NCBI RefSeq assembly: GCF_947568905.1 | Contig: NC_079165.1 | Span: forward strand, 3,658,001-3,722,000 | DNA: 64,000 nucleotides | Direction of reading: 5' to 3' | DNA from: Ostrea edulis | Lineage: Eukaryota | Shown here: positions 3,991 through 36,898 of the stretch, in pieces | Layout: the number at the start of each line of letters is the position of its first letter | Numbering within the stretch: position 1 is the stretch's first letter | Program-made: the position numbers and the translations under genes | Notes under the pieces: generated by a model | What the model saw: the letters and a program-made list of their open reading frames with translations, nothing else | Told to the model about the DNA's origin: nothing | Databases searched by the model: none

Positions 3991-4404
3991 TGTCGAGATA
4001 GGGGTAAGCAGTTGAAATAGTAAAACATTTTGGTTTTTTTTTGTTCATGTAACGTTATAAGAAATTGAATTTTTCACTTTATATAAGAAAAATTCGTTAA
4101 GCACGCATGCATCATAAAACCCTCTTTATTACATGAATTTGACCCAATGACAACACCTTTTACGTATTTTGACCTATTTCATACATCTTTCAGAGCAGAA
4201 AGAGCTTATCTATGCAACATTAAACAGCAGATTATAAACGAAAGTTTCTTATGCATTCAGTAATAAAAAATATATACTTAAGGTAGTACTCTACATCGTC
4301 ATAATTGTTGACTTCCTTTAAAAACATGGATGACAAAATCGATATCAGCAATATTTGACTTTTCCTTTTCTATTTAAATACCTAGCCGAGTAGCTCAGTG
4401 GGTT

Positions 4405-4590
4405 AGAATACCGAATGCTGAACTGTAGGTCGCAGGTTCGAGTCCAGCAGGGGTTTTAAAATTTTTTCAGATTACCTTCTACTAAAACTGTATTTTTTGA
4501 CAAAATAAAGTAAATTTGAAATTTTTCAACTTCAAAATATTGTTGTACATATCCTCCATTTTTCATCTACATCAAATTTCTCTGGTGTAG
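4405..4590 (+). repeat. 186-bp direct repeat, 5' copy (putative target-site duplication of the Tx1 LINE)
   Basis: AGAATACCGAATGCTG...TTTCTCTGGTGTAG, identical to 9928-10113 except one A/T difference in the AAAA/TTTTTT run. Confidence 0.95.
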
Positions 4591-4783
4591 AGAATATCCC
4601 CTGGGGACTTCCGGTCTACTTGTTGTAGTGAGCACGAGGAAATTTTGTGTGTCGGAAAATTTACCTTTTTGCGTCTACTGTGAGTAGTATATTTGCCGAC
4701 TGCTGTTCTGCAGAAGGCTTTATGTATATATGTTTCAATTTTCTGTGTAAAATAGTTAGACTTTGAGAACATTGTAAATAATT

Positions 4784-5938
4784 GTGCATAAACGTGAGAT
4801 GGCAGCCACGTCGGGTGGCAGCCATCTTGGCGGATCAAACAATTTATTCAAAGACAGAAAGTACTGTCGTGAGAACACTGTGGTTGTAAATGTTAGAGAC
4901 AATTCTCTCATCAAACCCGAGGGAATAATACAATTCGTCAATGAGAACTGTGGTTTGGGGTCTCTTTATGCATATGTGCCTAAATCAGGTAATTTGTATG
5001 AACTTACTCTTGATGGAAAAGCACCAACACAATATTTGCTGGAAGGAATAAGACTTGGCAATGATTTGTTTGAATGTCGTGAAGTTGTACAGACTTCACT
5101 GATTGTTAGTTTTTTACACCTTCCTGCTTACATAGATGATGGAGAGATTGAACAAACTTTAACATCAATGGGTGTTGAATTGCTGTCACCTATTAACAGA
5201 CGATTTTATCCTGGAACTACAATTGCTGACGGAACAAGGTACGTTAGGGTGAAACTACCTCCTCATATGCCCTCTTTTCCATACACTGTGAAATTTCAAA
5301 AGGAGTATCATAGGTGTATTCATAACGGTCAAATGAAAGTGTGTTCGCTGTGTTACGCGAGTGATCATTTATTTAGAGCATGTCCAAAATTTGTGTGCTT
5401 CAAGTGTAAGCAGCAAGGTCACTACGCGAGGGCCTGTAAAAATCACTTGTGTGAGCAGTGTGGTGAATGGACATTTAAATGCCAGTGTTGCATGAGTGAT
5501 CACAGTTCTGAAGAAAACAATGAATTGGAAGTGTCTGAGGTGGAGAAAGAGGACGTGTTAGAGGGTAACACAAATATGGAAACAGAAGAGGCGAACGAAG
5601 GGGTGCAACATGAGAACGAAAATATAGACGAATCACTTATTTGTGCGGAAACAAAACAAAAGAAACATACTGAGACGACAGAAAATCAAATTATTGTGAA
5701 TAAAAACGATAAAGTGAATATGTCTACTAATAAAAATGCCCCTAAGGATGGTGAAAACGAAATTCAAGAACGGGAATTGAATGAAGCCTCTCAAGATTGT
5801 GAAAACATGATTCAAGAGCGGAGTGAGAGTGACTCTAATGTAGGAACAGATTCGGAAAATGAAATCATCATCGTAGAGGGGAAAGGCAAAAGAAAAAAGA
5901 AATTGAAGAAGAAGAGAAACGCAAAAAAGAATAAATGA
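4784..5938 (+). CDS. Tx1 ORF1p, 384 aa, gag-like zinc-knuckle RNA-binding protein
   Basis: Two CX2CX4HX4C knuckles (CSLCYASDHLFRAC, CFKCKQQGHYARAC), a third Cys cluster, an acidic tract and a basic C-terminus; typical Tx1 ORF1 layout. Confidence 0.93.
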   Translation: MHKREMAATSGGSHLGGSNNLFKDRKYCRENTVVVNVRDNSLIKPEGIIQFVNENCGLGSLYAYVPKSGNLYELTLDGKAPTQYLLEGIRLGNDLFECREVVQTSLIVSFLHLPAYIDDGEIEQTLTSMGVELLSPINRRFYPGTTIADGTRYVRVKLPPHMPSFPYTVKFQKEYHRCIHNGQMKVCSLCYASDHLFRACPKFVCFKCKQQGHYARACKNHLCEQCGEWTFKCQCCMSDHSSEENNELEVSEVEKEDVLEGNTNMETEEANEGVQHENENIDESLICAETKQKKHTETTENQIIVNKNDKVNMSTNKNAPKDGENEIQERELNEASQDCENMIQERSESDSNVGTDSENEIIIVEGKGKRKKKLKKKRNAKKNK

Positions 5939-5939
5939 A

Positions 5940-8900
5940 ATGGAAAGAATGGACAAACTCTTATTCTTAATTACAATCATGGTGATAGTAACTTCGTGGA
6001 ACTGTAATGGATTGTGTAATGTAAATAAGATGAAAATGATATTTAGTTTATTGGATGAAAGGAAGTATGATATCATTGGTTTACAAGAAACTCATTGGCG
6101 AGATGACTTCATTGAAAAATATAAACATTTATGGAAAGGAAGTATTATGTACAATAACTCTGAGACGTCGTCAAAGGGTGTAGCTTTTTTGATTAGAAAT
6201 GAATTAAAAGATAATATTCAATATGTAAAAGGGTGCGATGGTAGATTTCTACATATAAAATACAAAGAAAATGATGAAAATTTTGATATTATAAACATAT
6301 ATGCACCTAACGTTGCAAAAGAAAGGGCCAATTTTTTTCAAGATATGTCTAGTATCATTCCATATTCAGTGAATCTTATAATACTAGGTGATTTTAATAA
6401 CACACTTGCAGAGATTGATAGATGTGGTAAGACACGTCATGTATATGACCAGGGTTACAAAGCCCTGTTCAATATGATGAATCAACATGGTGTAGCAGAT
6501 TTATGGAGAAGTAGAAATAGAGGAGAAAAAGTTTTTTCAAGAAAAATGTTAGTAGGAAACATGTTAGTTCAAAGTAGAATAGATTATATTCTAGTTTCAC
6601 ACGTTATAAGAACATATGTTAGAAATATATTTTATGTTGAAACTACACTAAGCGATCATTCGATGGTCGTGATGTACTTGAATAATACTGTTTGTGAAAG
6701 AGGACCAGGGTTGTGGATACATAATAATTTGCTATTGAATGATGATACATATAAAACAAAAATCGTAGAAATTATTGAAAGAGAAAAAAATTGTATATTA
6801 TATGAAAATTCAATGTTGGTGTGGTGGGATAATTTGAAATACAAGCTCAAAAAGTTTTCTCAAAGTTTTAGCAAAACTAGAGCCAGGGAACGAAATAAAG
6901 AATATTATGGTTTACAAAACAAAATGCAAAGAATTTCACAAAATTTAGCAAATGGAGTACAAGTTGATATTGAAAAATATGAAGCAATCAAACAAGAATT
7001 GTCAGATTTTGAAAATGAAAAGTGTCAGGGTGCAATACTTAGATCAAAAGCACAGTGGGCAAATGAATCAGATAAATGCACGAAATATTTTTTGAATTTA
7101 GAAAAACGAAGACAAGAATCAAATTCAGTAAAAGAATTGTTGAGTGACACAGAAGAAATAAAGAAGGATATAGATTCAATTTTAGAAATAGAGTACAATT
7201 TCTATTCTAACTTATATTCATCAGTGCGAATTGACTCTGAAAGTAAGGCACAGTTTTTGTCATATGTGAATAGAAAAATTGAAGAAAATGATAAGGAAAT
7301 GTGTGAAAGGGATATTAACAAAGAAGAAATTGAAACTGCAATCAAGGAAATGGCTAATAATAAAAGCCCAGGATCTGATGGGTTGACTGTTGAATTTTAT
7401 AAAATGTTTTTACCACAATTAAGAGATATTCTACTCAATTTATTTAAAGAAATTAACAGAAAACAAACGATGTCTAACTCTATGAAAATGGGTGTTATTA
7501 CGTTGTTATACAAGAAGAAAGGAGATAAGAAATTGTTGAAAAACTGGAGGCCTATAAGCCTGTTAAATGTAGATTATAAGATAATAGCAAGAGTTATGGC
7601 AAATAGACTGAAACAGGTATTACCAAATATTGTGTCTGAAACACAGACTTGTTGTATAATAGGAAGAGATATTGCAGATACTCTAGTTAGCATTAGAGAT
7701 GTGATTGATATGGTAGAGATGGATAATTTAGAGGGTTATGTGGTTAAAATTGATCAGGAAAAAGCTTTTGATAGAGTGAGTCATGAGTATTTACTTGATG
7801 TATTAGAAGTATTTGGTTTTGGAACCCAATTTAGAAAATGGGTACAGATATTTTATACGGATATATACAGTAGTGTAAAGTGTAATGGACATTTAACAAA
7901 ATATTTTCCTATTAAAAATTCTGTTAGACAAGGTTGCCCAATATCTGCATTATTATATGTTTTATCAGCAGAACCTCTGAATTATGTCATGAAACAAAAT
8001 ACAGTAATAAGAGGCATTCCAATACCAATGTCAGAAAAGAATGGGTTGATGTTTCAACATGCTGATGATACTACAATGACAGTGTGTGACAAAAATTCTG
8101 TTTTTGAAGTTTTCAAAGTATTTGACATGTATGAAAAAGCATCTGGTGCCAAAATAAACATTCACAAGTCTGAAATAATGTGTATAGGAACTGGTAGAAG
8201 TTTTGAACAGGAAAAGATATCATTGAGTGTTTCTGAGACAAGTGTCATGAAAATTCTTGGTATTTATTTTGGCAAAAATGGAGTAGAGTGTGAAAATTTA
8301 AATTGGAGAGACAAAGTTAAAAACATTAAGCAAACTCTTAATTTATGGAGACAGAGATCCTTAGCAGTTCAAGGTAGAGCCACTTTAATTAATACCTTGT
8401 TCATGTCTAAATTATGGTACTCATTGTCAGTTATATCGATTCCACAATGGGCTAGAGACAGTATTCAAAAGGAGTGTACCAATTTTTTATGGAATTTTGG
8501 CTCACACTTGGTATCTTATAAAACAATAATTGGTGAAAAACACAATGGTGGTTTGAAAATAGCTGATATCTATCTAAAAATGTTATCATTTAGACTAAAG
8601 TTTCTTGCAAAGCACTTTTGTTGTAATAAAGATTTTCTGTGGAAACATATTTTTAGATATTTCCTATCAAAGATTCAAAATTTAGGAGCAGGAATGGAGA
8701 TATTTTTACTACAGTTTAAGAAAACAGATTTAGAGGGTCTACCACAGTTTTACAATGAATTATTTTGTGCATGGTATGCCATAAAAGATTATATCATTGT
8801 TACAGAAAAAGAAAATGATGTTTTTAATTATTGTCTGTTTTTTAATCCGAAAGTACAAAGAAGAAACAAAATGTTGAATTGGAAAGATTTTATTAGTGCT

Positions 8901-9314
8901 AGTATTACACATGTCAAGGATATTTCATATGAAGTAATTCCGGGATTTTTACCAATATCATGTATTGTGGAGATTTTTCAAGAACAAAATTCAGAGGTAA
9001 ATGTCTCACTGATTACAAAAAATTATAAGGATTTGTTATTATCTATTCCAGAAGAATGGAAAAATTATGTTCATGAAAATGAGTACAAAAGAACATGCTT
9101 TCAGCCAAATTTTGATATTTCATATAGAGATCAAAGGATAGTGTTCCAATCCGGTACAGTACAAATATTTTATAATTTGTTAGTTCAAAAAATGTTTCAA
9201 GAACCGGTGTCAAATATTTATTGGCGAGATAAACTTGATATGAATGATAAATCATCCATTGAAAAGCGATGGGAAACGGTATGGGTGTTATACAAAACAC
9301 CAGATATTACTTAA
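5940..9314 (+). CDS. Tx1 ORF2p: APE endonuclease plus reverse transcriptase (1124 aa, ends at premature TAA)
   Basis: APE motifs SWNCNGL, LQETHW, GDFN, SRIDY, LSDH. RT motifs KSPGSDG, NWRPISLLNVDYK, IDQEKAFDRV, VRQGCPIS, FQHADD. Confidence 0.96.
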   Translation: MERMDKLLFLITIMVIVTSWNCNGLCNVNKMKMIFSLLDERKYDIIGLQETHWRDDFIEKYKHLWKGSIMYNNSETSSKGVAFLIRNELKDNIQYVKGCDGRFLHIKYKENDENFDIINIYAPNVAKERANFFQDMSSIIPYSVNLIILGDFNNTLAEIDRCGKTRHVYDQGYKALFNMMNQHGVADLWRSRNRGEKVFSRKMLVGNMLVQSRIDYILVSHVIRTYVRNIFYVETTLSDHSMVVMYLNNTVCERGPGLWIHNNLLLNDDTYKTKIVEIIEREKNCILYENSMLVWWDNLKYKLKKFSQSFSKTRARERNKEYYGLQNKMQRISQNLANGVQVDIEKYEAIKQELSDFENEKCQGAILRSKAQWANESDKCTKYFLNLEKRRQESNSVKELLSDTEEIKKDIDSILEIEYNFYSNLYSSVRIDSESKAQFLSYVNRKIEENDKEMCERDINKEEIETAIKEMANNKSPGSDGLTVEFYKMFLPQLRDILLNLFKEINRKQTMSNSMKMGVITLLYKKKGDKKLLKNWRPISLLNVDYKIIARVMANRLKQVLPNIVSETQTCCIIGRDIADTLVSIRDVIDMVEMDNLEGYVVKIDQEKAFDRVSHEYLLDVLEVFGFGTQFRKWVQIFYTDIYSSVKCNGHLTKYFPIKNSVRQGCPISALLYVLSAEPLNYVMKQNTVIRGIPIPMSEKNGLMFQHADDTTMTVCDKNSVFEVFKVFDMYEKASGAKINIHKSEIMCIGTGRSFEQEKISLSVSETSVMKILGIYFGKNGVECENLNWRDKVKNIKQTLNLWRQRSLAVQGRATLINTLFMSKLWYSLSVISIPQWARDSIQKECTNFLWNFGSHLVSYKTIIGEKHNGGLKIADIYLKMLSFRLKFLAKHFCCNKDFLWKHIFRYFLSKIQNLGAGMEIFLLQFKKTDLEGLPQFYNELFCAWYAIKDYIIVTEKENDVFNYCLFFNPKVQRRNKMLNWKDFISASITHVKDISYEVIPGFLPISCIVEIFQEQNSEVNVSLITKNYKDLLLSIPEEWKNYVHENEYKRTCFQPNFDISYRDQRIVFQSGTVQIFYNLLVQKMFQEPVSNIYWRDKLDMNDKSSIEKRWETVWVLYKTPDIT

Positions 9315-9839
9315 CTGGATTTCAAAAATTTTCACAATATTATATTTACATATGAGAAACTTTTTAAGATAGGGAAGTCTGATTCTAAAATATGTCCAAT
9401 TTGTATGCTAGAATGCGAGGATATAATGCATTTATTTATTAGATGTAAAGAGTTGGCTGAATTTAAGAACAATTTTGTTATTTATCATCTTGAATCGTTA
9501 TTGAAAGATTGTGAAAGTGAAGTTTTTAACAGATTAAACTTTGAAGAAATATTCATGACAGCATTACATAAGGGTATCAAAAACGTGAATGTATTTTTTG
9601 TAAATTATTTTATATCAGTATGCAGATTTTGTATTTATAGAAGAAGACAGATTTTTTTGCAAAGTGAAAAAAAAATAGATATTGAAAGGCTTTGTAGATA
9701 TACATTGAGACATTACATTACTTATAACCATTATCAATTGACTGTTTTAGAAAAGAAAATGAACCTGTTTAAAAAGTTTTTCTTACATAGAAATCCTCTA
9801 TTGAAAGAAACAGAGGGAATATTATTGTTCATATTTTAG
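9315..9839 (+). pseudogene. In-frame continuation of ORF2 after the nonsense codon (zf-RVT-like CCHC domain)
   Basis: Same frame as 5940: LDFKNFHNIIFTYEKL...CPICMLECEDIMHLFIRC...LLFIF*. Confidence 0.9.
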
Positions 9840-9927
9840 ATACAAAGTGTTTTAAATGTGATTGTAACTGATGATTAGTCTGTGATATCTGTTTAAATGT
9901 TAATCAATAAAAGAGAAAAAAAAAAAA

Positions 9928-10113
9928 AGAATACCGAATGCTGAACTGTAGGTCGCAGGTTCGAGTCCAGCAGGGGTTTTAAATTTTTTTCAGATTACCT
10001 TCTACTAAAACTGTATTTTTTGACAAAATAAAGTAAATTTGAAATTTTTCAACTTCAAAATATTGTTGTACATATCCTCCATTTTTCATCTACATCAAAT
10101 TTCTCTGGTGTAG
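9928..10113 (+). repeat. 186-bp direct repeat, 3' copy
   Basis: Begins immediately after the LINE poly(A) and continues into the host element's natural end CATACCTCCTTAA. Confidence 0.95.
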
Positions 10114-10134
10114 CATACCTCCTTAAGCGCGTGA

Positions 10135-10282
10135 GAGATCCATCCCTGCTCCAACGCCGTAAGCGCCGAGCATATAAGCCTAAATTGTGCAGCCCTTCAT
10201 CGGCAATGGTGAAGTCTTCATATGACTGAGTGAAAAAATTCTTGAGCGCGACGTTAAACATATACAAGAAACCAACCAACAA
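10135..10282 (+). mobile_element. 5'-truncated SINE tail (family shared with 13624, 14403, 19420, 28660, 52994)
   Basis: CCCTGCTC...GTAAGCGCCGAGCAT...GCAGCCCTTCATCGGCAATGGTGA...ACGTTAAACA followed by a (CAAC)n tail. Confidence 0.8.
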
Positions 10283-33100: not shown

Positions 33101-36100
33101 TTATCACCTGCATATGGTGTTTATATATCTCAACTGATTCGATATGTAAGAGCTTGCTCTGCGTATAGTCAGTTTTTAAATCGAGGTAAGCTACTGACAA
33201 ACAAGTTGATGGTACAGGGGTTTCAACAGTCTTGATTGAAGTCAGCATTTCGCAAATTCTATGGTCGTTATAACAATGTAGTTCGTCAATACATCGTATC
33301 ATTGGGTCAAATGCTGTCTGACGTGTTTCATACCGATTGTTAAGCCGTTCTTGGCACACTGATTTTGACTGTGGATAACTCCGTTTACCTGATCAGGATA
33401 TGGGGCTCACGGCGGGTGTGACCGGTCGACAGGGGATGCTTACTCCTCCTACGCCCCTGATCCCACCTCTGGTGTGTCCAGGGGTCGGTGTTTGCCAAAC
33501 TATCTATTTTGTATTGTTTATAGGAGTTATGAGATTGATCGCTGTTCGTTATCTTCACCTTTCATAGATCAACATTAAAATAAAACAGAATATACGATAG
33601 CAAATAGAAATCTGTCTTCAGTTAAATTATCAATTTAAGAGAAACTATGCAAGTGATAACAAAACTTTAAAACGAAAGCATGTCAATTTTTTCCAGGTAT
33701 GACGCTGTTTGCTCTACGAATGTGGGCAGCCGGGGGGGAATGTTACAGCAAGACTTGCCTGAACGGAAAGACCGTGATTATAACGGGAGCAAACACAGGC
33801 ATAGGGAAGGAGACCGCGATAAACCTGGCAGGAAGAGGTAAGTAAGGCTCGCCAGGTCAGAAATATTGTAATAGAGAATAAAGCCGCTAAAAACTACAGA
33901 AGGGGTAAGGCTACCCAGACTGAGGTAAGGGGATGGATAAACAGCACTATAGGAAGAAAACTGAGGTGGTTGATGGAAAAGGGAAGAAAAGGCGGGAGAA
34001 GGAGAGAGGGGGTTAGAGGAGAGAGACGTGGACCCCTCTCCACTTACCTACAAACCCAAGGATAGACAATACGATATTGCTATACCTAGAAGAGAATTCG
34101 TACGGTGATATGTTATTTACCTTTAGAGACAGAAAATTACATTCCACGTGCACAGTGTCCGTATTCCTTGAAATTTCAGCATCATTGATGTATACTAAGT
34201 AACCTCTTCTTTTATTTAAGTACATCCCTGTGGGACAGCTAGTACATGTATATAGATTCATTGTAGGGGCAAGGGTGATCATGGCTTGCCGTAACAAGAG
34301 TCGGGGAGAGACGGCACTGTCTGACGTCAGAAAAAAGACCGGAAGTAAACAAGTCGTTCTGAAGATGCTGGATTTGGCATCGCTGGAATCCGTCCGAACA
34401 TTTGCTGAGGACGTAAAGAAAACAGAGTCCAGACTCGACATTCTTATAAACAATGCAGGTAGGGGTTTTGATTACAGATATATGATCAAGTTGAAAAGTT
34501 ATTAAGGTGAATTCAGCATGCTTATTTGACCGATAAAAAAACCTTTTGGGTGGGCATTGTAAAACTTTAATCATGATCCATTTTATCAAATTCGGCCTTT
34601 TCTATTTTTCTCCACAATACTTGAAAATATGTATACTTTTTAAATATTATCATGATGATATTACCACTATCAAAAGACCTCTCAATTTATGATCAGTTTT
34701 AGTTCTGTTTCCAGTCTAGTCAATATCCCTCTCTTATTCGACCAATACAATGTATATCATTCTACTGCACGGCGACTTTAAGAAGGAATAACACACCGGG
34801 GAAATCTAATAAGGATGGAAAATGGAGGATATGCACAATATTTTGAAATTGAAATTTACCTTATCTTGTTGAAAAATGCTAGTAGAAAGTAATCTAGGGG
34901 AACATTTAATACCCCTGCTAGCTGGACGTGACCGAACGATCTACAGATCAGCAGTCGACACGTTAGACTACTGAGCTACCCAGCTAAACAACTGGATTTA
35001 AAACGTAAAAACATGTATTGCCTGATATTTATAGTTTCATTCATGTTTCACAAGGAAGTCGGCCATCATGACGACGTGGTATTCCTTCTTAAAGGTTGCA
35101 AGTCTAAAAGTCGAATATCCCCGAGCATTTCTCCGAGCAATGTCTATAACGTTACAACTATATCTGCAGAGTTGCTGCAAGTAGTAAATTGTGCATACAG
35201 CTTTATTTAAGAACGTTAATCACCCCCTGCTATGGAATACAGACATTTTGTAGTGTTTGTCAAGGCCAGCTTGGTTCCTCTATTTAATTCTTATTTCTAC
35301 TGAATGCTTTCATCCATCTCCAATGACAATTTGTAAATGTTTTTTTAAGGAGGGGCGGGGGGTTTTGAGGTTTATGTTTTGGCTTTTAAAAGAAAAAAAC
35401 TGCGTTGCAATACACCAGATAATACCTAGAACATTATAAGATGCTCATCAATATATAGGGCTGATGATGTGTCCACACACGAAAACTGCAGACGGATTCG
35501 AGTTGCAACTCGGAACAAACCATCTGGGCCATTTCCTGCTCACTAACCTGTTGTTGGATAAAATTGAAGGATCCGCTCCTGCTAGGATAATCAACTTGTC
35601 CTCTATTGCCCACATGGGTAAGTGATATCGTGAGTAACTATTTTATGAAAGAAAAGAAGTTATATTTTCATAAGAGGATGGTTTTAAGAATTTCGCATCG
35701 CTTAAACGATCTTTTTGTTCAATTAATCTTGAAGTTGAAATAAATTCAGCAAACACATGTTAAAGCAGAGAATAGCTAATGTAATGATAAAGACGTTTTT
35801 ATAATGTTAACTTGTTTTATAAGCGTTTACCGGTAAATATGTATAAAAATTATAATAATTGTAATCAGAAATGACATCAATATACTTAGGTTGCAACAGA
35901 ATTAATTTTGATGATATCAACAGTGAAATTACCTATGGCAAATGGCAGGCTTACGCACAGAGCAAATTGGCCAACGTTCTGTTTACCAGAGAGCTGAATA
36001 AAAGACTCAAAGGTACACCAGCCAGCGTCACCTTAAAGCCGAGTTTGTGTCTAATCTTAAAATTGGGCAGAGGGCTCAAATAGACTTATCCCGCAGGGCT

Positions 36101-36898
36101 CAAATAGGCTGCCTAAAATGAATTGAAATGACCTTCAGGCGGTACTCGACATCGTTATAATGGCTGACTTCCTTTTAGAACATGGATGAAAAATATAAAT
36201 ATCAGGAATATTTGTCTATTCATTTCAAATATTACTGCCTAGCTGAGTAGCACAGTTGATTACCACGTTCACTGCTGATCGCGGGTTGAAGTCAAGCAGG
36301 TGTTTACATCCCCCTCCCGATTGCTGTCTACTAAAACTGCATTTTTTTACTCAGTAAAGTAAATTTGAAAGTTGTCAATGTCAAAGTATTGTTGTACATA
36401 TCCTCCACTTTTCTGTGGACTAAAGCAATTACAATGTTGTTTTCTCTGCAGGAACTGGAGTTGCCGTTAACTCGGTACATCCCGGAATGGTAATAACCGA
36501 GTTATTCCGATACGTCTCCGGATACAGTATTATATGGCCCTTCATGATCTTTCTATGTAAAACCACGAGGGAAGGAGCACAAACTAGTATATACTGCGCT
36601 GTTGACGAAAGTATAGAGAACGTCACTGGAAAATATTTCAGGTAATTTGTACATGCAACTGTAGAATTGAAAACATCAAAATTATTTAGAATTTCCGGTG
36701 TGATGCATTGGAGTCATATTTATTTACGTCACGTGATACTTGTACACTGTACTGAGTTTTAGTATCTAAGTATATAATGTATGCTGTAAATATTTCAGTG
36801 ATTGTGCGATAAAGGAGGAATCTAAAGCAGCGCAGGACGACGAGGCAGCAAAGAGACTTTGGGACGTGTCTGTTAAAATGGTGGGGCTGGATAAATAA
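30137..36898 (+). CDS. Retinol dehydrogenase 11/12/13-like short-chain dehydrogenase, paralog 1 (7 exons, 322 aa)
   Basis: Exons 30137-30200, 33697-33837, 34267-34458, 35459-35617, 35890-36012, 36452-36641, 36799-36898, all GT-AG and phase-compatible. Motifs [20 protein letters not shown], catalytic YAQSK, SVHPG. Confidence 0.92.
31370..31950 (-). mobile_element. Penelope-like 3' fragment
   Basis: Reverse complement of RT C-terminus ([10 protein letters not shown]) and terminal GAAAAGTGAAGATAACGAACAGTGATCAATCTC. Confidence 0.85.
33020..33566 (+). mobile_element. Penelope-like 3' fragment
   Basis: [41 protein letters not shown]...SDVFHTDC* plus 3' UTR. Confidence 0.9.
34775..35010 (-). mobile_element. 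Uninterrupted relative of the Tx1 host element
   Basis: Reverse complement of the tRNA-like motif and the AAAATATTGT..CATATCCTCCATTTT segment; ends GGTGTGTTATTCCTTCTTAA. Confidence 0.65.
36175..36420 (+). mobile_element. Second uninterrupted relative of the Tx1 host element
   Basis: CCTAGCTGAGTAGCACAG...CTACTAAAACTG...GTAAATTTGAAA...TATTGTTGTACATATCCTCCA. Confidence 0.7.

What the first reader, a model, noticed from the sequence alone, without database searches (positions are those of the whole stretch)
4405..10113. Tx1-clade LINE with a 186-bp target-site duplication
Seen: the LINE (4591-9927) lies between two 186-bp copies differing at one base. The 3' copy starts at the poly(A) and runs into the host element's natural end. 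Uninterrupted relatives of the host (34775, 36175) carry the segment once. Known: L1/Tx1 TSDs are usually under ~25 bp; very long TSDs are known from few elements, such as rotifer R9 (126 bp). Inference: the two strand nicks were ~186 bp apart, possibly a family trait or nucleosome-scale spacing. The LINE 5' end (AGAATAT) shares 6 nt with the TSD start (AGAATAC).
Basis: partly seen in the sequence, partly recalled or inferred. Interest (0 to 1): 0.82.

Follow-up and report, generated by a model that had tools for sequence, protein, structure and literature searches.

The report
tRNA-site LINE with one-off 186-bp duplication
A young jumping gene (LINE) in the flat oyster really is flanked by a 186-bp duplication of its target, but other copies of the same family make ordinary 9-18-bp duplications, so it is a rare accident; the more notable result is that this LINE lineage aims at one spot inside tRNA-like sequences.

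Summary
Two 186-nt direct repeats (4405-4590, 9928-10113) differ at one base and abut a nearly intact LINE. The first A is ambiguous with the poly(A), so the duplication is 185 or 186 bp.

The host is a TTAA-flanked, MITE-like element of about 318 bp with a degenerate tRNA-like module. It carries the segment once in other copies.

The "family trait" reading is refuted. A second Ostrea edulis copy (L015, 98.5-99.5% identical) sits in another copy of the same MITE at the same site, with a 13-14-bp duplication. Two further same-family 5' junctions lie 9 and about 17 nt past that site.

The left edge of the 186-bp repeat is the conserved first-nick site, between tRNA positions 21 and 22 at the end of the D-loop. 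Relatives 47-82% identical in protein show poly(A) followed by tRNA-Tyr, Phe, Ile or Arg-like sequence starting at positions 18-22.

The "AGAATAT" similarity lies in a 15-nt extension (4591-4605) that resembles target sequence. All other copies begin at GACTTCCGG (4606).

Best reading: normal target-primed insertion by a tRNA-site-specific, L1-group (Tx1-like) LINE, with a top-strand break 186 bp downstream instead of about 15 bp.

The parts
4278..4281 (.). TTAA flanking the host MITE on the 5' side; matches TTAA at 10123-10126
   Evidence: the L015 copy of the MITE is also flanked by TTAA on both sides
4282..4404 (+). Host MITE, 5' part. Imperfect TIR starts GGTAGTACTCTAC. Ends with the A-box half of the tRNA-like module (..TAGCTCAGTGGGTT).
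   Evidence: 94% identical to L015 9662-9811
4385..4453 (+). Degenerate tRNA-like module of the MITE, with A box and B box (GGTTCGAGTCC). Not called as a tRNA by ARAGORN or Rfam. Holds the LINE target site between 4405 (position 21) and 4406 (position 22).
   Evidence: numbering by comparison with the intact tRNA-Lys of L003
4405..4590 (+). Upstream copy of the 185/186-bp target-site duplication
   Evidence: one difference (4461 A). The other copy and L015 have T there, so this copy carries the derived base.
4591..4605 (+). 15-nt 5' extension AGAATATCCCCTGGG. It resembles tRNA-like positions 21-35 and is absent from every other copy. Probably a piece of the source copy's target or TSD carried in the RNA (inference).
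   Evidence: first 6 nt identical to the target site AGAATA
4606..9915 (+). LINE body. Starts GACTTCCGGTCTAC as in L015-L019 and L002. 5' UTR, ORF1, ORF2, 3' UTR with AATAAA at 9906-9911.
   Evidence: 99.8-99.9% identical to Logan contigs L016-L018
4799..5938 (+). ORF1, 379 aa, intact, two CCHC zinc knuckles
   Evidence: 98% identical to O. edulis XP_048776547.2
5940..9839 (+). ORF2 frame, 1299 codons: APE endonuclease, RT, C-terminal zf-RVT region. Interrupted by one in-frame TAA at 9312-9314; the same frame is open in L016.
9916..9927 (+). Poly(A) tail; the run continues to 9928, which is ambiguous with the TSD
9928..10113 (+). Downstream copy of the target-site duplication. Starts at the lineage's conserved first-nick site.
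10114..10126 (+). Last 9 bp of the MITE (CATACCTCC, 3' TIR end) plus the flanking TTAA
36133..36413 (+). Older uninterrupted relative of the host MITE (about 75% identity); carries the segment once
34778..35077 (-). Older uninterrupted relative of the host MITE (about 69% identity), with clear TIRs; carries the segment once

Best explanation
A recently active LINE of the L1 group (Tx1-like) is specific for the D-arm of tRNA genes and tRNA-like modules. It inserted by target-primed reverse transcription into the tRNA-like module of a TTAA-flanked MITE.

Shown: the bottom-strand nick fell at the lineage's usual place, between tRNA positions 21 and 22 (GGGTTA|GAAT, window 4405|4406). Poly(A)-primed cDNA synthesis copied the whole element.

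Inferred: in this one event the top strand was broken 185-186 bp downstream (after GTGTAG, 4590) rather than the usual 9-18 bp. The long 3' overhang primed second-strand synthesis and fill-in duplicated the interval. That makes it a true TSD but an outlier.

Also inferred: the 15-nt AGAATATCCCCTGGG in front of the LINE body is target-type sequence inherited from the source copy through its RNA. The cause of the distant top-strand break is unknown. Possibilities include a pre-existing nick, a replication intermediate, or loose second-strand cleavage on a degenerate target that lacks a real anticodon loop.
For: (1) Exact 186-nt repeat abutting both LINE ends, with 1 mismatch.
(2) The host segment is single-copy in three other MITE copies.
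(3) The left repeat edge is the first-nick site seen in independent insertions. Same family: L015. 82% family: L001 and L019, into two different tRNA-Arg-like copies. 47-49% families: L003 (tRNA-Tyr), L014 (tRNA-Phe), L006, and, shifted 4 nt, L005 (Ile-TAT) and L008 (Ile-AAT).
(4) Same-family 5' junctions lie 13-14 nt (L015), 9 nt (L016) and about 17 nt (L017) past that site. Relatives show 12-17 nt.
(5) The two repeat copies differ at 1 of 186 positions. A different MITE copy (L015) differs at 3-4 of 186 here and 6% in the 5' part, which favours duplication of one target over import from another locus.
(6) Rare long TSDs beside mostly short ones are documented for LINEs: ZfL2-2 in DT40 cells, 24 of 25 at 20 bp or less and one of 1228 bp (PMC2666801).
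Against: Only one other copy (L015) has both junctions in a single long-read assembly. L016 and L017 give 5' flanks only, so their TSD lengths assume the canonical first nick. The origin of the 15-nt extension is inferred. Why the second break lay 186 bp away is unexplained. L019, from the 82% family, has a 5' flank that is not tRNA-like, so aberrant 5' junctions may be less rare in this lineage than four copies suggest.
Confidence: 0.75

Rival explanations
1. Pseudo-TSD. The 186 bp upstream of the LINE was carried in the RNA as a 5' transduction from a source copy lying behind a MITE 3' part. It was joined to the target MITE by homology, mimicking a duplication.
For: Site-specific LINEs are often co-transcribed with their target, and the 5' junction can form by homology (PMC4494074 discussion). 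This copy does carry 15 nt of target-like sequence at its 5' end.
Against: L015, L016, L017, L018 and L019 do not have the 186 bp upstream of the LINE body. The model needs a source inserted at a non-canonical site (GTGTAG|CATACC) in the same MITE family. The two copies differ at 1 of 186 positions, whereas separate MITE copies differ by 2-6%.
Confidence: 0.07
2. The MITE already had a tandem 186-bp duplication. The LINE inserted at the second unit's site with an ordinary 6-bp TSD (AGAATA), followed by 9 extra bases.
For: AGAATA at 4591-4596 equals the start of the downstream unit, as a 6-bp TSD would.
Against: A pre-existing duplication whose boundary is exactly the LINE's nick site would be an unexplained coincidence. 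The second unit would lack the A-box sequence (AGTGGGTTA) found upstream of the nick in all eight informative 5' flanks. No other MITE copy shows such a duplication.
Confidence: 0.05
3. Long TSDs of about 186 bp are a regular property of this family, as in rotifer R9, perhaps set by nucleosome spacing.
For: This copy. Also, L019 from the 82% family has a non-tRNA 5' flank, which could hide a long duplication of more than 210 bp.
Against: L015 has a 13-14-bp TSD at the same site in the same MITE family. L016 and L017 junctions lie 9 and about 17 nt from the site. Relatives show 12-17 nt.
Confidence: 0.04
4. Assembly artefact, or a later rearrangement such as unequal exchange or gene conversion between LINE-bearing MITE copies, created the second 186-bp unit.
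Against: Both junctions have the clean anatomy of a retrotransposition event: poly(A) directly on the conserved nick site, and extension plus LINE body on the other side. The copies differ at one base, so they were not simply copied by an assembler. No second LINE copy exists in the window to recombine with.
Confidence: 0.06

Closest known systems
Tx1L of Xenopus laevis and other target-specific Tx1-clade LINEs (Keno/U2 snRNA, Mutsu/5S rRNA, Dewa/spacer of tRNA-Leu arrays, Tx1-Mar/Mariner-N4_AMi; PMC4494074, PMC3706591)
   Same: APE-type endonuclease plus RT LINE with a CCHC ORF1 and a poly(A) tail. Sequence-specific insertion into multicopy small-RNA genes or into a non-autonomous DNA transposon; Tx1L targets Tx1D, a piggyBac-type element, and here the host is a TTAA-flanked MITE. 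The endonuclease hairpin loop has the length of the Tx1L loop. Relatives sit in tRNA arrays (L003, L004, L012, L014).
   Different: The target here is inside the tRNA or tRNA-like sequence (D-loop/D-stem border, positions 21|22), not a spacer, snRNA or 5S gene. It is hit in several isoacceptors and in a MITE module. Clade membership was not tested against reference RT sequences.
R9 of bdelloid rotifers
   Same: A site-specific LINE flanked by a duplication far longer than the usual 25 bp or less.
   Different: In R9 the long TSD is the rule for the family. Here it is one copy among at least four, and the others have 9-18 bp.
Rare long TSDs in LINE retrotransposition assays (ZfL2-2 in chicken DT40 cells, PMC2666801)
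   Same: Mostly short target alterations (24 of 25 at 20 bp or less) with an occasional very long duplication (1228 bp), attributed to the position of second-strand cleavage. The window copy shows the same pattern.
   Different: That was an engineered element in cultured cells. This is a natural germ-line copy of a site-specific family, where the first nick can be placed exactly.
Dada DNA transposons and Dictyostelium TRE elements (tRNA-gene targeting; PMC3706591)
   Same: Both use multicopy tRNA genes as safe havens. Dada inserts at fixed sites inside tRNA genes.
   Different: Dada is a DDE DNA transposon with 6-7-bp TSDs. TRE elements insert near, not inside, tRNA genes through Pol III factors.

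Membership tests
Non-LTR retrotransposon, L1 group | ORF2 with an N-terminal APE-type endonuclease and an RT domain | tested here: met
   Pfam Exo_endo_phos 2.4e-15 and RVT_1 7.2e-31. Best solved relative is human L1 ORF2p, E 1.6e-77 over residues 16-880.
Non-LTR retrotransposon, L1 group | Poly(A) tail with polyadenylation signal, and insertion flanked by a target duplication | tested here: met
   AATAAA 9906-9911, A-run 9916-9928, repeats 4405-4590 and 9928-10113.
Tx1 clade | RT phylogeny places the element with Tx1 reference families | not testable with these tools
   No reference Tx1 or Repbase sequences were available. The atlas and protein searches return unnamed clusters.
Tx1 clade | Target-sequence-specific insertion, typical of many Tx1 families | tested here: met
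   At least nine independent 3' junctions at tRNA positions 18-22, and four same-family copies in tRNA-like sequence.
Tx1 clade | Tx1L-type endonuclease betaB6-betaB5 hairpin loop | tested here: inconclusive
   The endonuclease aligns without a gap to LTx, which is L1-EN carrying the grafted Tx1L loop (61.9 bits). Alignment to native L1-EN needs a 2-residue gap (55.7 bits). The difference is small.
Long-TSD site-specific LINE (R9-like) | All or most copies make the same long duplication | tested here: not met
   L015 has 13-14 bp. L016 and L017 junctions lie 9 and about 17 nt from the nick site.
5'-transducing LINE copy | Other copies, or the source, carry the same upstream 186 bp | tested here: not met
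   The 5' flanks of L015, L016, L017 and L019 all differ and lack the 186 bp. The census is small: five copies.
True TSD from staggered breaks | An empty site with one copy of the segment at this very locus | not testable with these tools
Only paralogous MITE copies show the single-copy state.
piggyBac-type MITE (host element) | TTAA duplication at both ends, and terminal inverted repeats | tested here: met
   TTAA at 4278-4281 and 10123-10126, and at both ends of the L015 copy. Imperfect TIR GGTAGTACTCTAC / GGAGGTATGCTAC. No transposase partner was sought.

The most novel reading that the evidence does not exclude
This LINE belongs to an undescribed, bivalve-wide lineage of L1-group (Tx1-like) retrotransposons in oysters and mussels. 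Its endonuclease nicks inside tRNA genes at the D-loop/D-stem border (positions 21|22, GGTTA|GAGC), whichever the isoacceptor. In Ostrea edulis it has moved onto the tRNA-like module of a piggyBac-type MITE. The 186-bp duplication then shows that in this lineage first-strand nicking is precise, while top-strand breakage is not tied to it.
Probability: 0.5. Interest if true: 0.6.

Novelty: new member of a known kind. Interest (0 to 1): 0.45.

Why it matters
As a long TSD alone it is a curiosity. It is a natural germ-line example of the rare "long TSD" outcome already seen in LINE assays, and here the first nick can be placed to the base because the family is site-specific.

The wider result matters more. 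A set of related LINE families in oysters and mussels inserts at one position inside tRNA genes or tRNA-like modules. In the papers reachable here, no LINE is described that inserts inside tRNA genes; the nearest case, Dewa, targets a tRNA-array spacer.

Such elements are natural models for sequence-specific APE endonucleases. They are also a marker for how tRNA-derived modules in MITEs and SINEs attract insertions. The contrast between a fixed first nick and a variable second break (9 to 186 bp) bears on the poorly understood second half of LINE integration.

Tried and rejected
- **Reads:** There is no junction or empty-allele check.
- **Exact-product look-ups:** the window's ORF2, ORF1 and C-terminal ORF found nothing. 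P0131 was not on record. The look-up of encoding contigs is now exhausted.
- **Metagenome scan with ORF2:** gave only distant relatives, L003 and L004.
- **Exact-pattern scans for the LINE 5' end:** 0 hits in genome contigs and in viral contigs.
- **Rfam on 4200-10200:** no ribozyme and no tRNA hit, so there is no evidence for a self-cleaving 5' end. Rfam on relatives' loci does not detect the truncated tRNA halves, so junction positions were read from alignments instead.
- **DNA folding of the target (4380-4600):** no structure beyond shuffles, z = -0.21, so no fold explains the 186-bp spacing.
- **Second nick site:** comparison of GTGTAG|CATACC with the first-nick consensus and with the second-nick sites of other copies showed no shared motif (by eye).
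- **Protein atlas:** not informative on the clade.
- **Source of the 15-nt extension:** no template found in the window or in any locus.
- **Earlier scan notes:** none on this LINE family.
Full report
**Observation.** The window holds one 186-nt direct repeat, 4405-4590 and 9928-10113, with a single difference (4461 A versus T). The similarity stops sharply at both edges. The first base is an A that could equally belong to the A-run 9916-9928, so the duplicated length is 185 or 186 bp.

Between the copies lies a LINE with the following parts:
- ORF1 at 4799-5938: 379 aa, intact, two CCHC knuckles.
- ORF2 frame at 5940-9839: APE endonuclease plus RT. It is collinear over 1267 residues with relative P0001 and is broken only by one in-frame TAA at 9312-9314.
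- AATAAA at 9906-9911, then poly(A).

No other copy of the LINE is in the window.

**The host element.** The repeat belongs to an element of about 318 bp (4282-4590 plus 10114-10122), flanked by TTAA on both sides and with imperfect terminal inverted repeats. It is a MITE of piggyBac type by its target duplication. Its core (4385-4453) is a degenerate tRNA-like module with A and B boxes, which neither ARAGORN nor Rfam calls as a tRNA. Two old relatives in the window (36133-36413 plus strand; 35077-34778 minus strand) and a younger copy in L015 carry the 186-bp segment once. The repeat ends 9 bp before the element's last base.

**Other copies of the same family.**
- A search with ORF1 found a 98% identical Ostrea edulis protein, XP_048776547.2.
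- Its locus, L015 (OX387705.1:88438301-88459904), is a different place in the genome. Its LINE is 98.5-99.5% identical to the window's and sits in another copy of the same MITE family.
- The L015 5' junction reads ..GCTCAGTAGGTTA GAATACCGAATGC|GG GACTTCCGG. The 3' junction reads poly(A)|GAATACCGAATGCTGAACTG. That is the same insertion site with a duplication of only 13-14 bp.
- Three Logan contigs are 99.8-99.9% identical to the window's LINE. L016 has 5' flank ..AGTAGCTTAGTAGGTTA GAATACCGA|GACTTCCGG, 9 nt past the site, in a third MITE copy. L017 has 5' flank ..GTAGCTCAGTGGTTA AAGCATTGGGCTGGGGAA|GACTTCCGG, about 17 nt past the site, in another tRNA-like sequence. L018 has no flank.

None of these copies has the 186 bp upstream, so that segment is not part of the element either.

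**The insertion site is conserved across the lineage.** Relatives found through ORF2 and fetched with their flanks show poly(A) followed directly by a tRNA sequence that starts at the 3' side of the D-arm.

| Locus | ORF2 identity to window | Sequence after poly(A) | tRNA type |
|---|---|---|---|
| L001, L019 | 81% | GAGCGTTGGGCTTCTAATCC.. (two different target copies) | tRNA-Arg-like |
| L003 | 47% | GAGCGGAGGACTGTAG + intron.. | tRNA-Tyr |
| L014 | 48% | GAGCGTTAGACTGAAGATC.. | tRNA-Phe |
| L006 | 49% | GAGCATGAG | not assigned |
| L005 | 49% | GTTAGCGCGCCGTACTTATA (4 nt further 5') | Ile-TAT |
| L008 | 49% | GTTAGAGCGTCGTGCTAATAA (4 nt further 5') | Ile-AAT |

An alignment with intact tRNAs places the nick between positions 21 and 22.

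The relatives' 5' junctions lie 12-17 nt downstream, in the anticodon arm. L003 has tRNA-Lys up to position 38, L013 has 16 nt, and L005, L007 and L002 have 12 nt. L003, L004, L012 and L014 sit in tRNA gene arrays. L012 (Mytilus edulis) and L004 use a spacer or downstream site instead. The window's left repeat edge (GGGTTA|GAAT) is this same site. That ties the 186-bp duplication to the endonuclease nick of the LINE itself.

**The "AGAATAT" similarity.** All other copies, including the 82% and 65% families, begin the LINE body at GACTTCCGG, which is 4606 in the window. Bases 4591-4605 (AGAATATCCCCTGGG) are thus an extension peculiar to this copy. Its first six bases equal the target site AGAATA, and the whole resembles positions 21-35 of a tRNA-like module. 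It differs from this MITE after base 6, so it was not copied from this target. No template for it exists in the window or in the loci. I infer that it is a piece of the source copy's upstream duplication, carried in the RNA as a small 5' transduction. This is inference only.

**Mechanism.** The best reading (confidence about 0.75) is ordinary target-primed reverse transcription at the canonical site, with a top-strand break 185-186 bp downstream instead of 9-18 bp. This gives a true TSD that is an outlier.

Occasional very long TSDs among mostly short ones are documented. For ZfL2-2 in DT40 cells, 24 of 25 alterations were 20 bp or less and one TSD was 1228 bp. There the length is attributed to the position of second-strand cleavage (PMC2666801).

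Two observations argue against import of the upstream unit from another locus. No other copy carries it. The two units also differ at 1 of 186 positions, whereas the L015 MITE differs from them at 3-4 of 186 and by 6% in its 5' part.

A pre-existing tandem duplication plus a 6-bp TSD would need a breakpoint that coincides exactly with the nick site, and a target lacking the conserved A-box flank.

I found no DNA structure and no sequence motif that explains why the second break lay at 4590. Nucleosome spacing remains untested speculation.

**Classification.** ORF2 is closest among solved structures to human L1 ORF2p (E 1.6e-77). The endonuclease aligns without a gap to LTx, the L1 endonuclease carrying the grafted Tx1L hairpin loop, and slightly better than to native L1-EN. 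Target specificity for small-RNA genes and for DNA transposons is the hallmark of the Tx1 clade: Tx1L into the piggyBac-type Tx1D, Keno into U2, Mutsu into 5S, Dewa into the spacer of tRNA-Leu arrays, and Tx1-Mar (PMC4494074, PMC3706591). "Tx1-like" is therefore plausible. It was not tested by phylogeny because no reference sequences were at hand. The open literature I could search describes Tx1/L1-Tx1 elements in bivalves (PMC10294476) but no LINE that inserts inside tRNA genes. Repbase could not be consulted.

**Limits.**
- Only L015 gives both junctions of another same-family copy in a long-read assembly.
- Logan and metagenome contigs may join the flanks of different copies. L003, for example, has tRNA-Lys on the 5' side and tRNA-Tyr on the 3' side.

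**Verdict.** The 186-bp duplication is real and most likely a true TSD, but it is a one-off, not a family trait. The lasting result is a tRNA-D-arm-specific LINE lineage in bivalves that here uses a MITE's tRNA-like module as its target.

Noticed in passing
window 4278-4590 and 10114-10126; L015 9662-9805 and 15596-15795: The host repeat is a TTAA-flanked, TIR-bearing MITE (piggyBac-type by its target duplication) of about 318 bp. Its core is a degenerate tRNA-like module with A and B boxes. Carrying a Pol III-type module inside a DNA-transposon derivative is an unusual combination.
   Followed up: partly
L015 10402-10853 (equivalent to window about 5195): The second O. edulis copy of the LINE carries a 452-bp insertion with long perfect terminal inverted repeats (CAGGTTGGGAACACTTCCCCTATAGCGAGA...), flanked by a duplicated ATTAA/TTAA. 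This is another MITE inside ORF1. The NCBI gene model for LOC125680821 seems to treat it as an intron.
   Followed up: partly
L003 1424-1466 and 7634-7705: In this 47% relative the 5' flank is a tRNA-Lys of a 1030-bp tandem array, cut at position 38, while the 3' flank is a tRNA-Tyr starting at position 22. The flanks come from different genes. Possible causes are a deletion between neighbouring tRNA genes, recombination, or a chimeric contig.
   Followed up: no
L019 1-138: The 82% relative has a 5' flank that is not tRNA-like and is not found in the 210 bp after its poly(A), although its 3' flank is a tRNA-Arg-like sequence from position 22. This may be a second aberrant 5' junction (a long duplication or a deletion) or a chimeric metagenome contig.
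   Followed up: no
L012 7745-13961 (Mytilus edulis CAJPWZ010002714.1); L004 1-510: More distant relatives sit in tRNA arrays but at other sites. L012 lies between a 1363-bp tRNA-Tyr array and the spacer of a 600-bp array of class-II tRNA-like genes. L004 lies 8 nt downstream of a tRNA-Gln. Target sites seem to have shifted within tRNA arrays during the lineage's history.
   Followed up: partly
window 9312-9314: The window copy's ORF2 has a single in-frame stop. The rest of the 1299-codon frame is open, and the frame is uninterrupted in the Logan contig L016, so the family was probably active very recently.
   Followed up: yes
L015 1779-21604: The L015 LINE copy lies within the span of a host gene model (889-aa product running over the locus end), presumably in an intron.
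   Followed up: no
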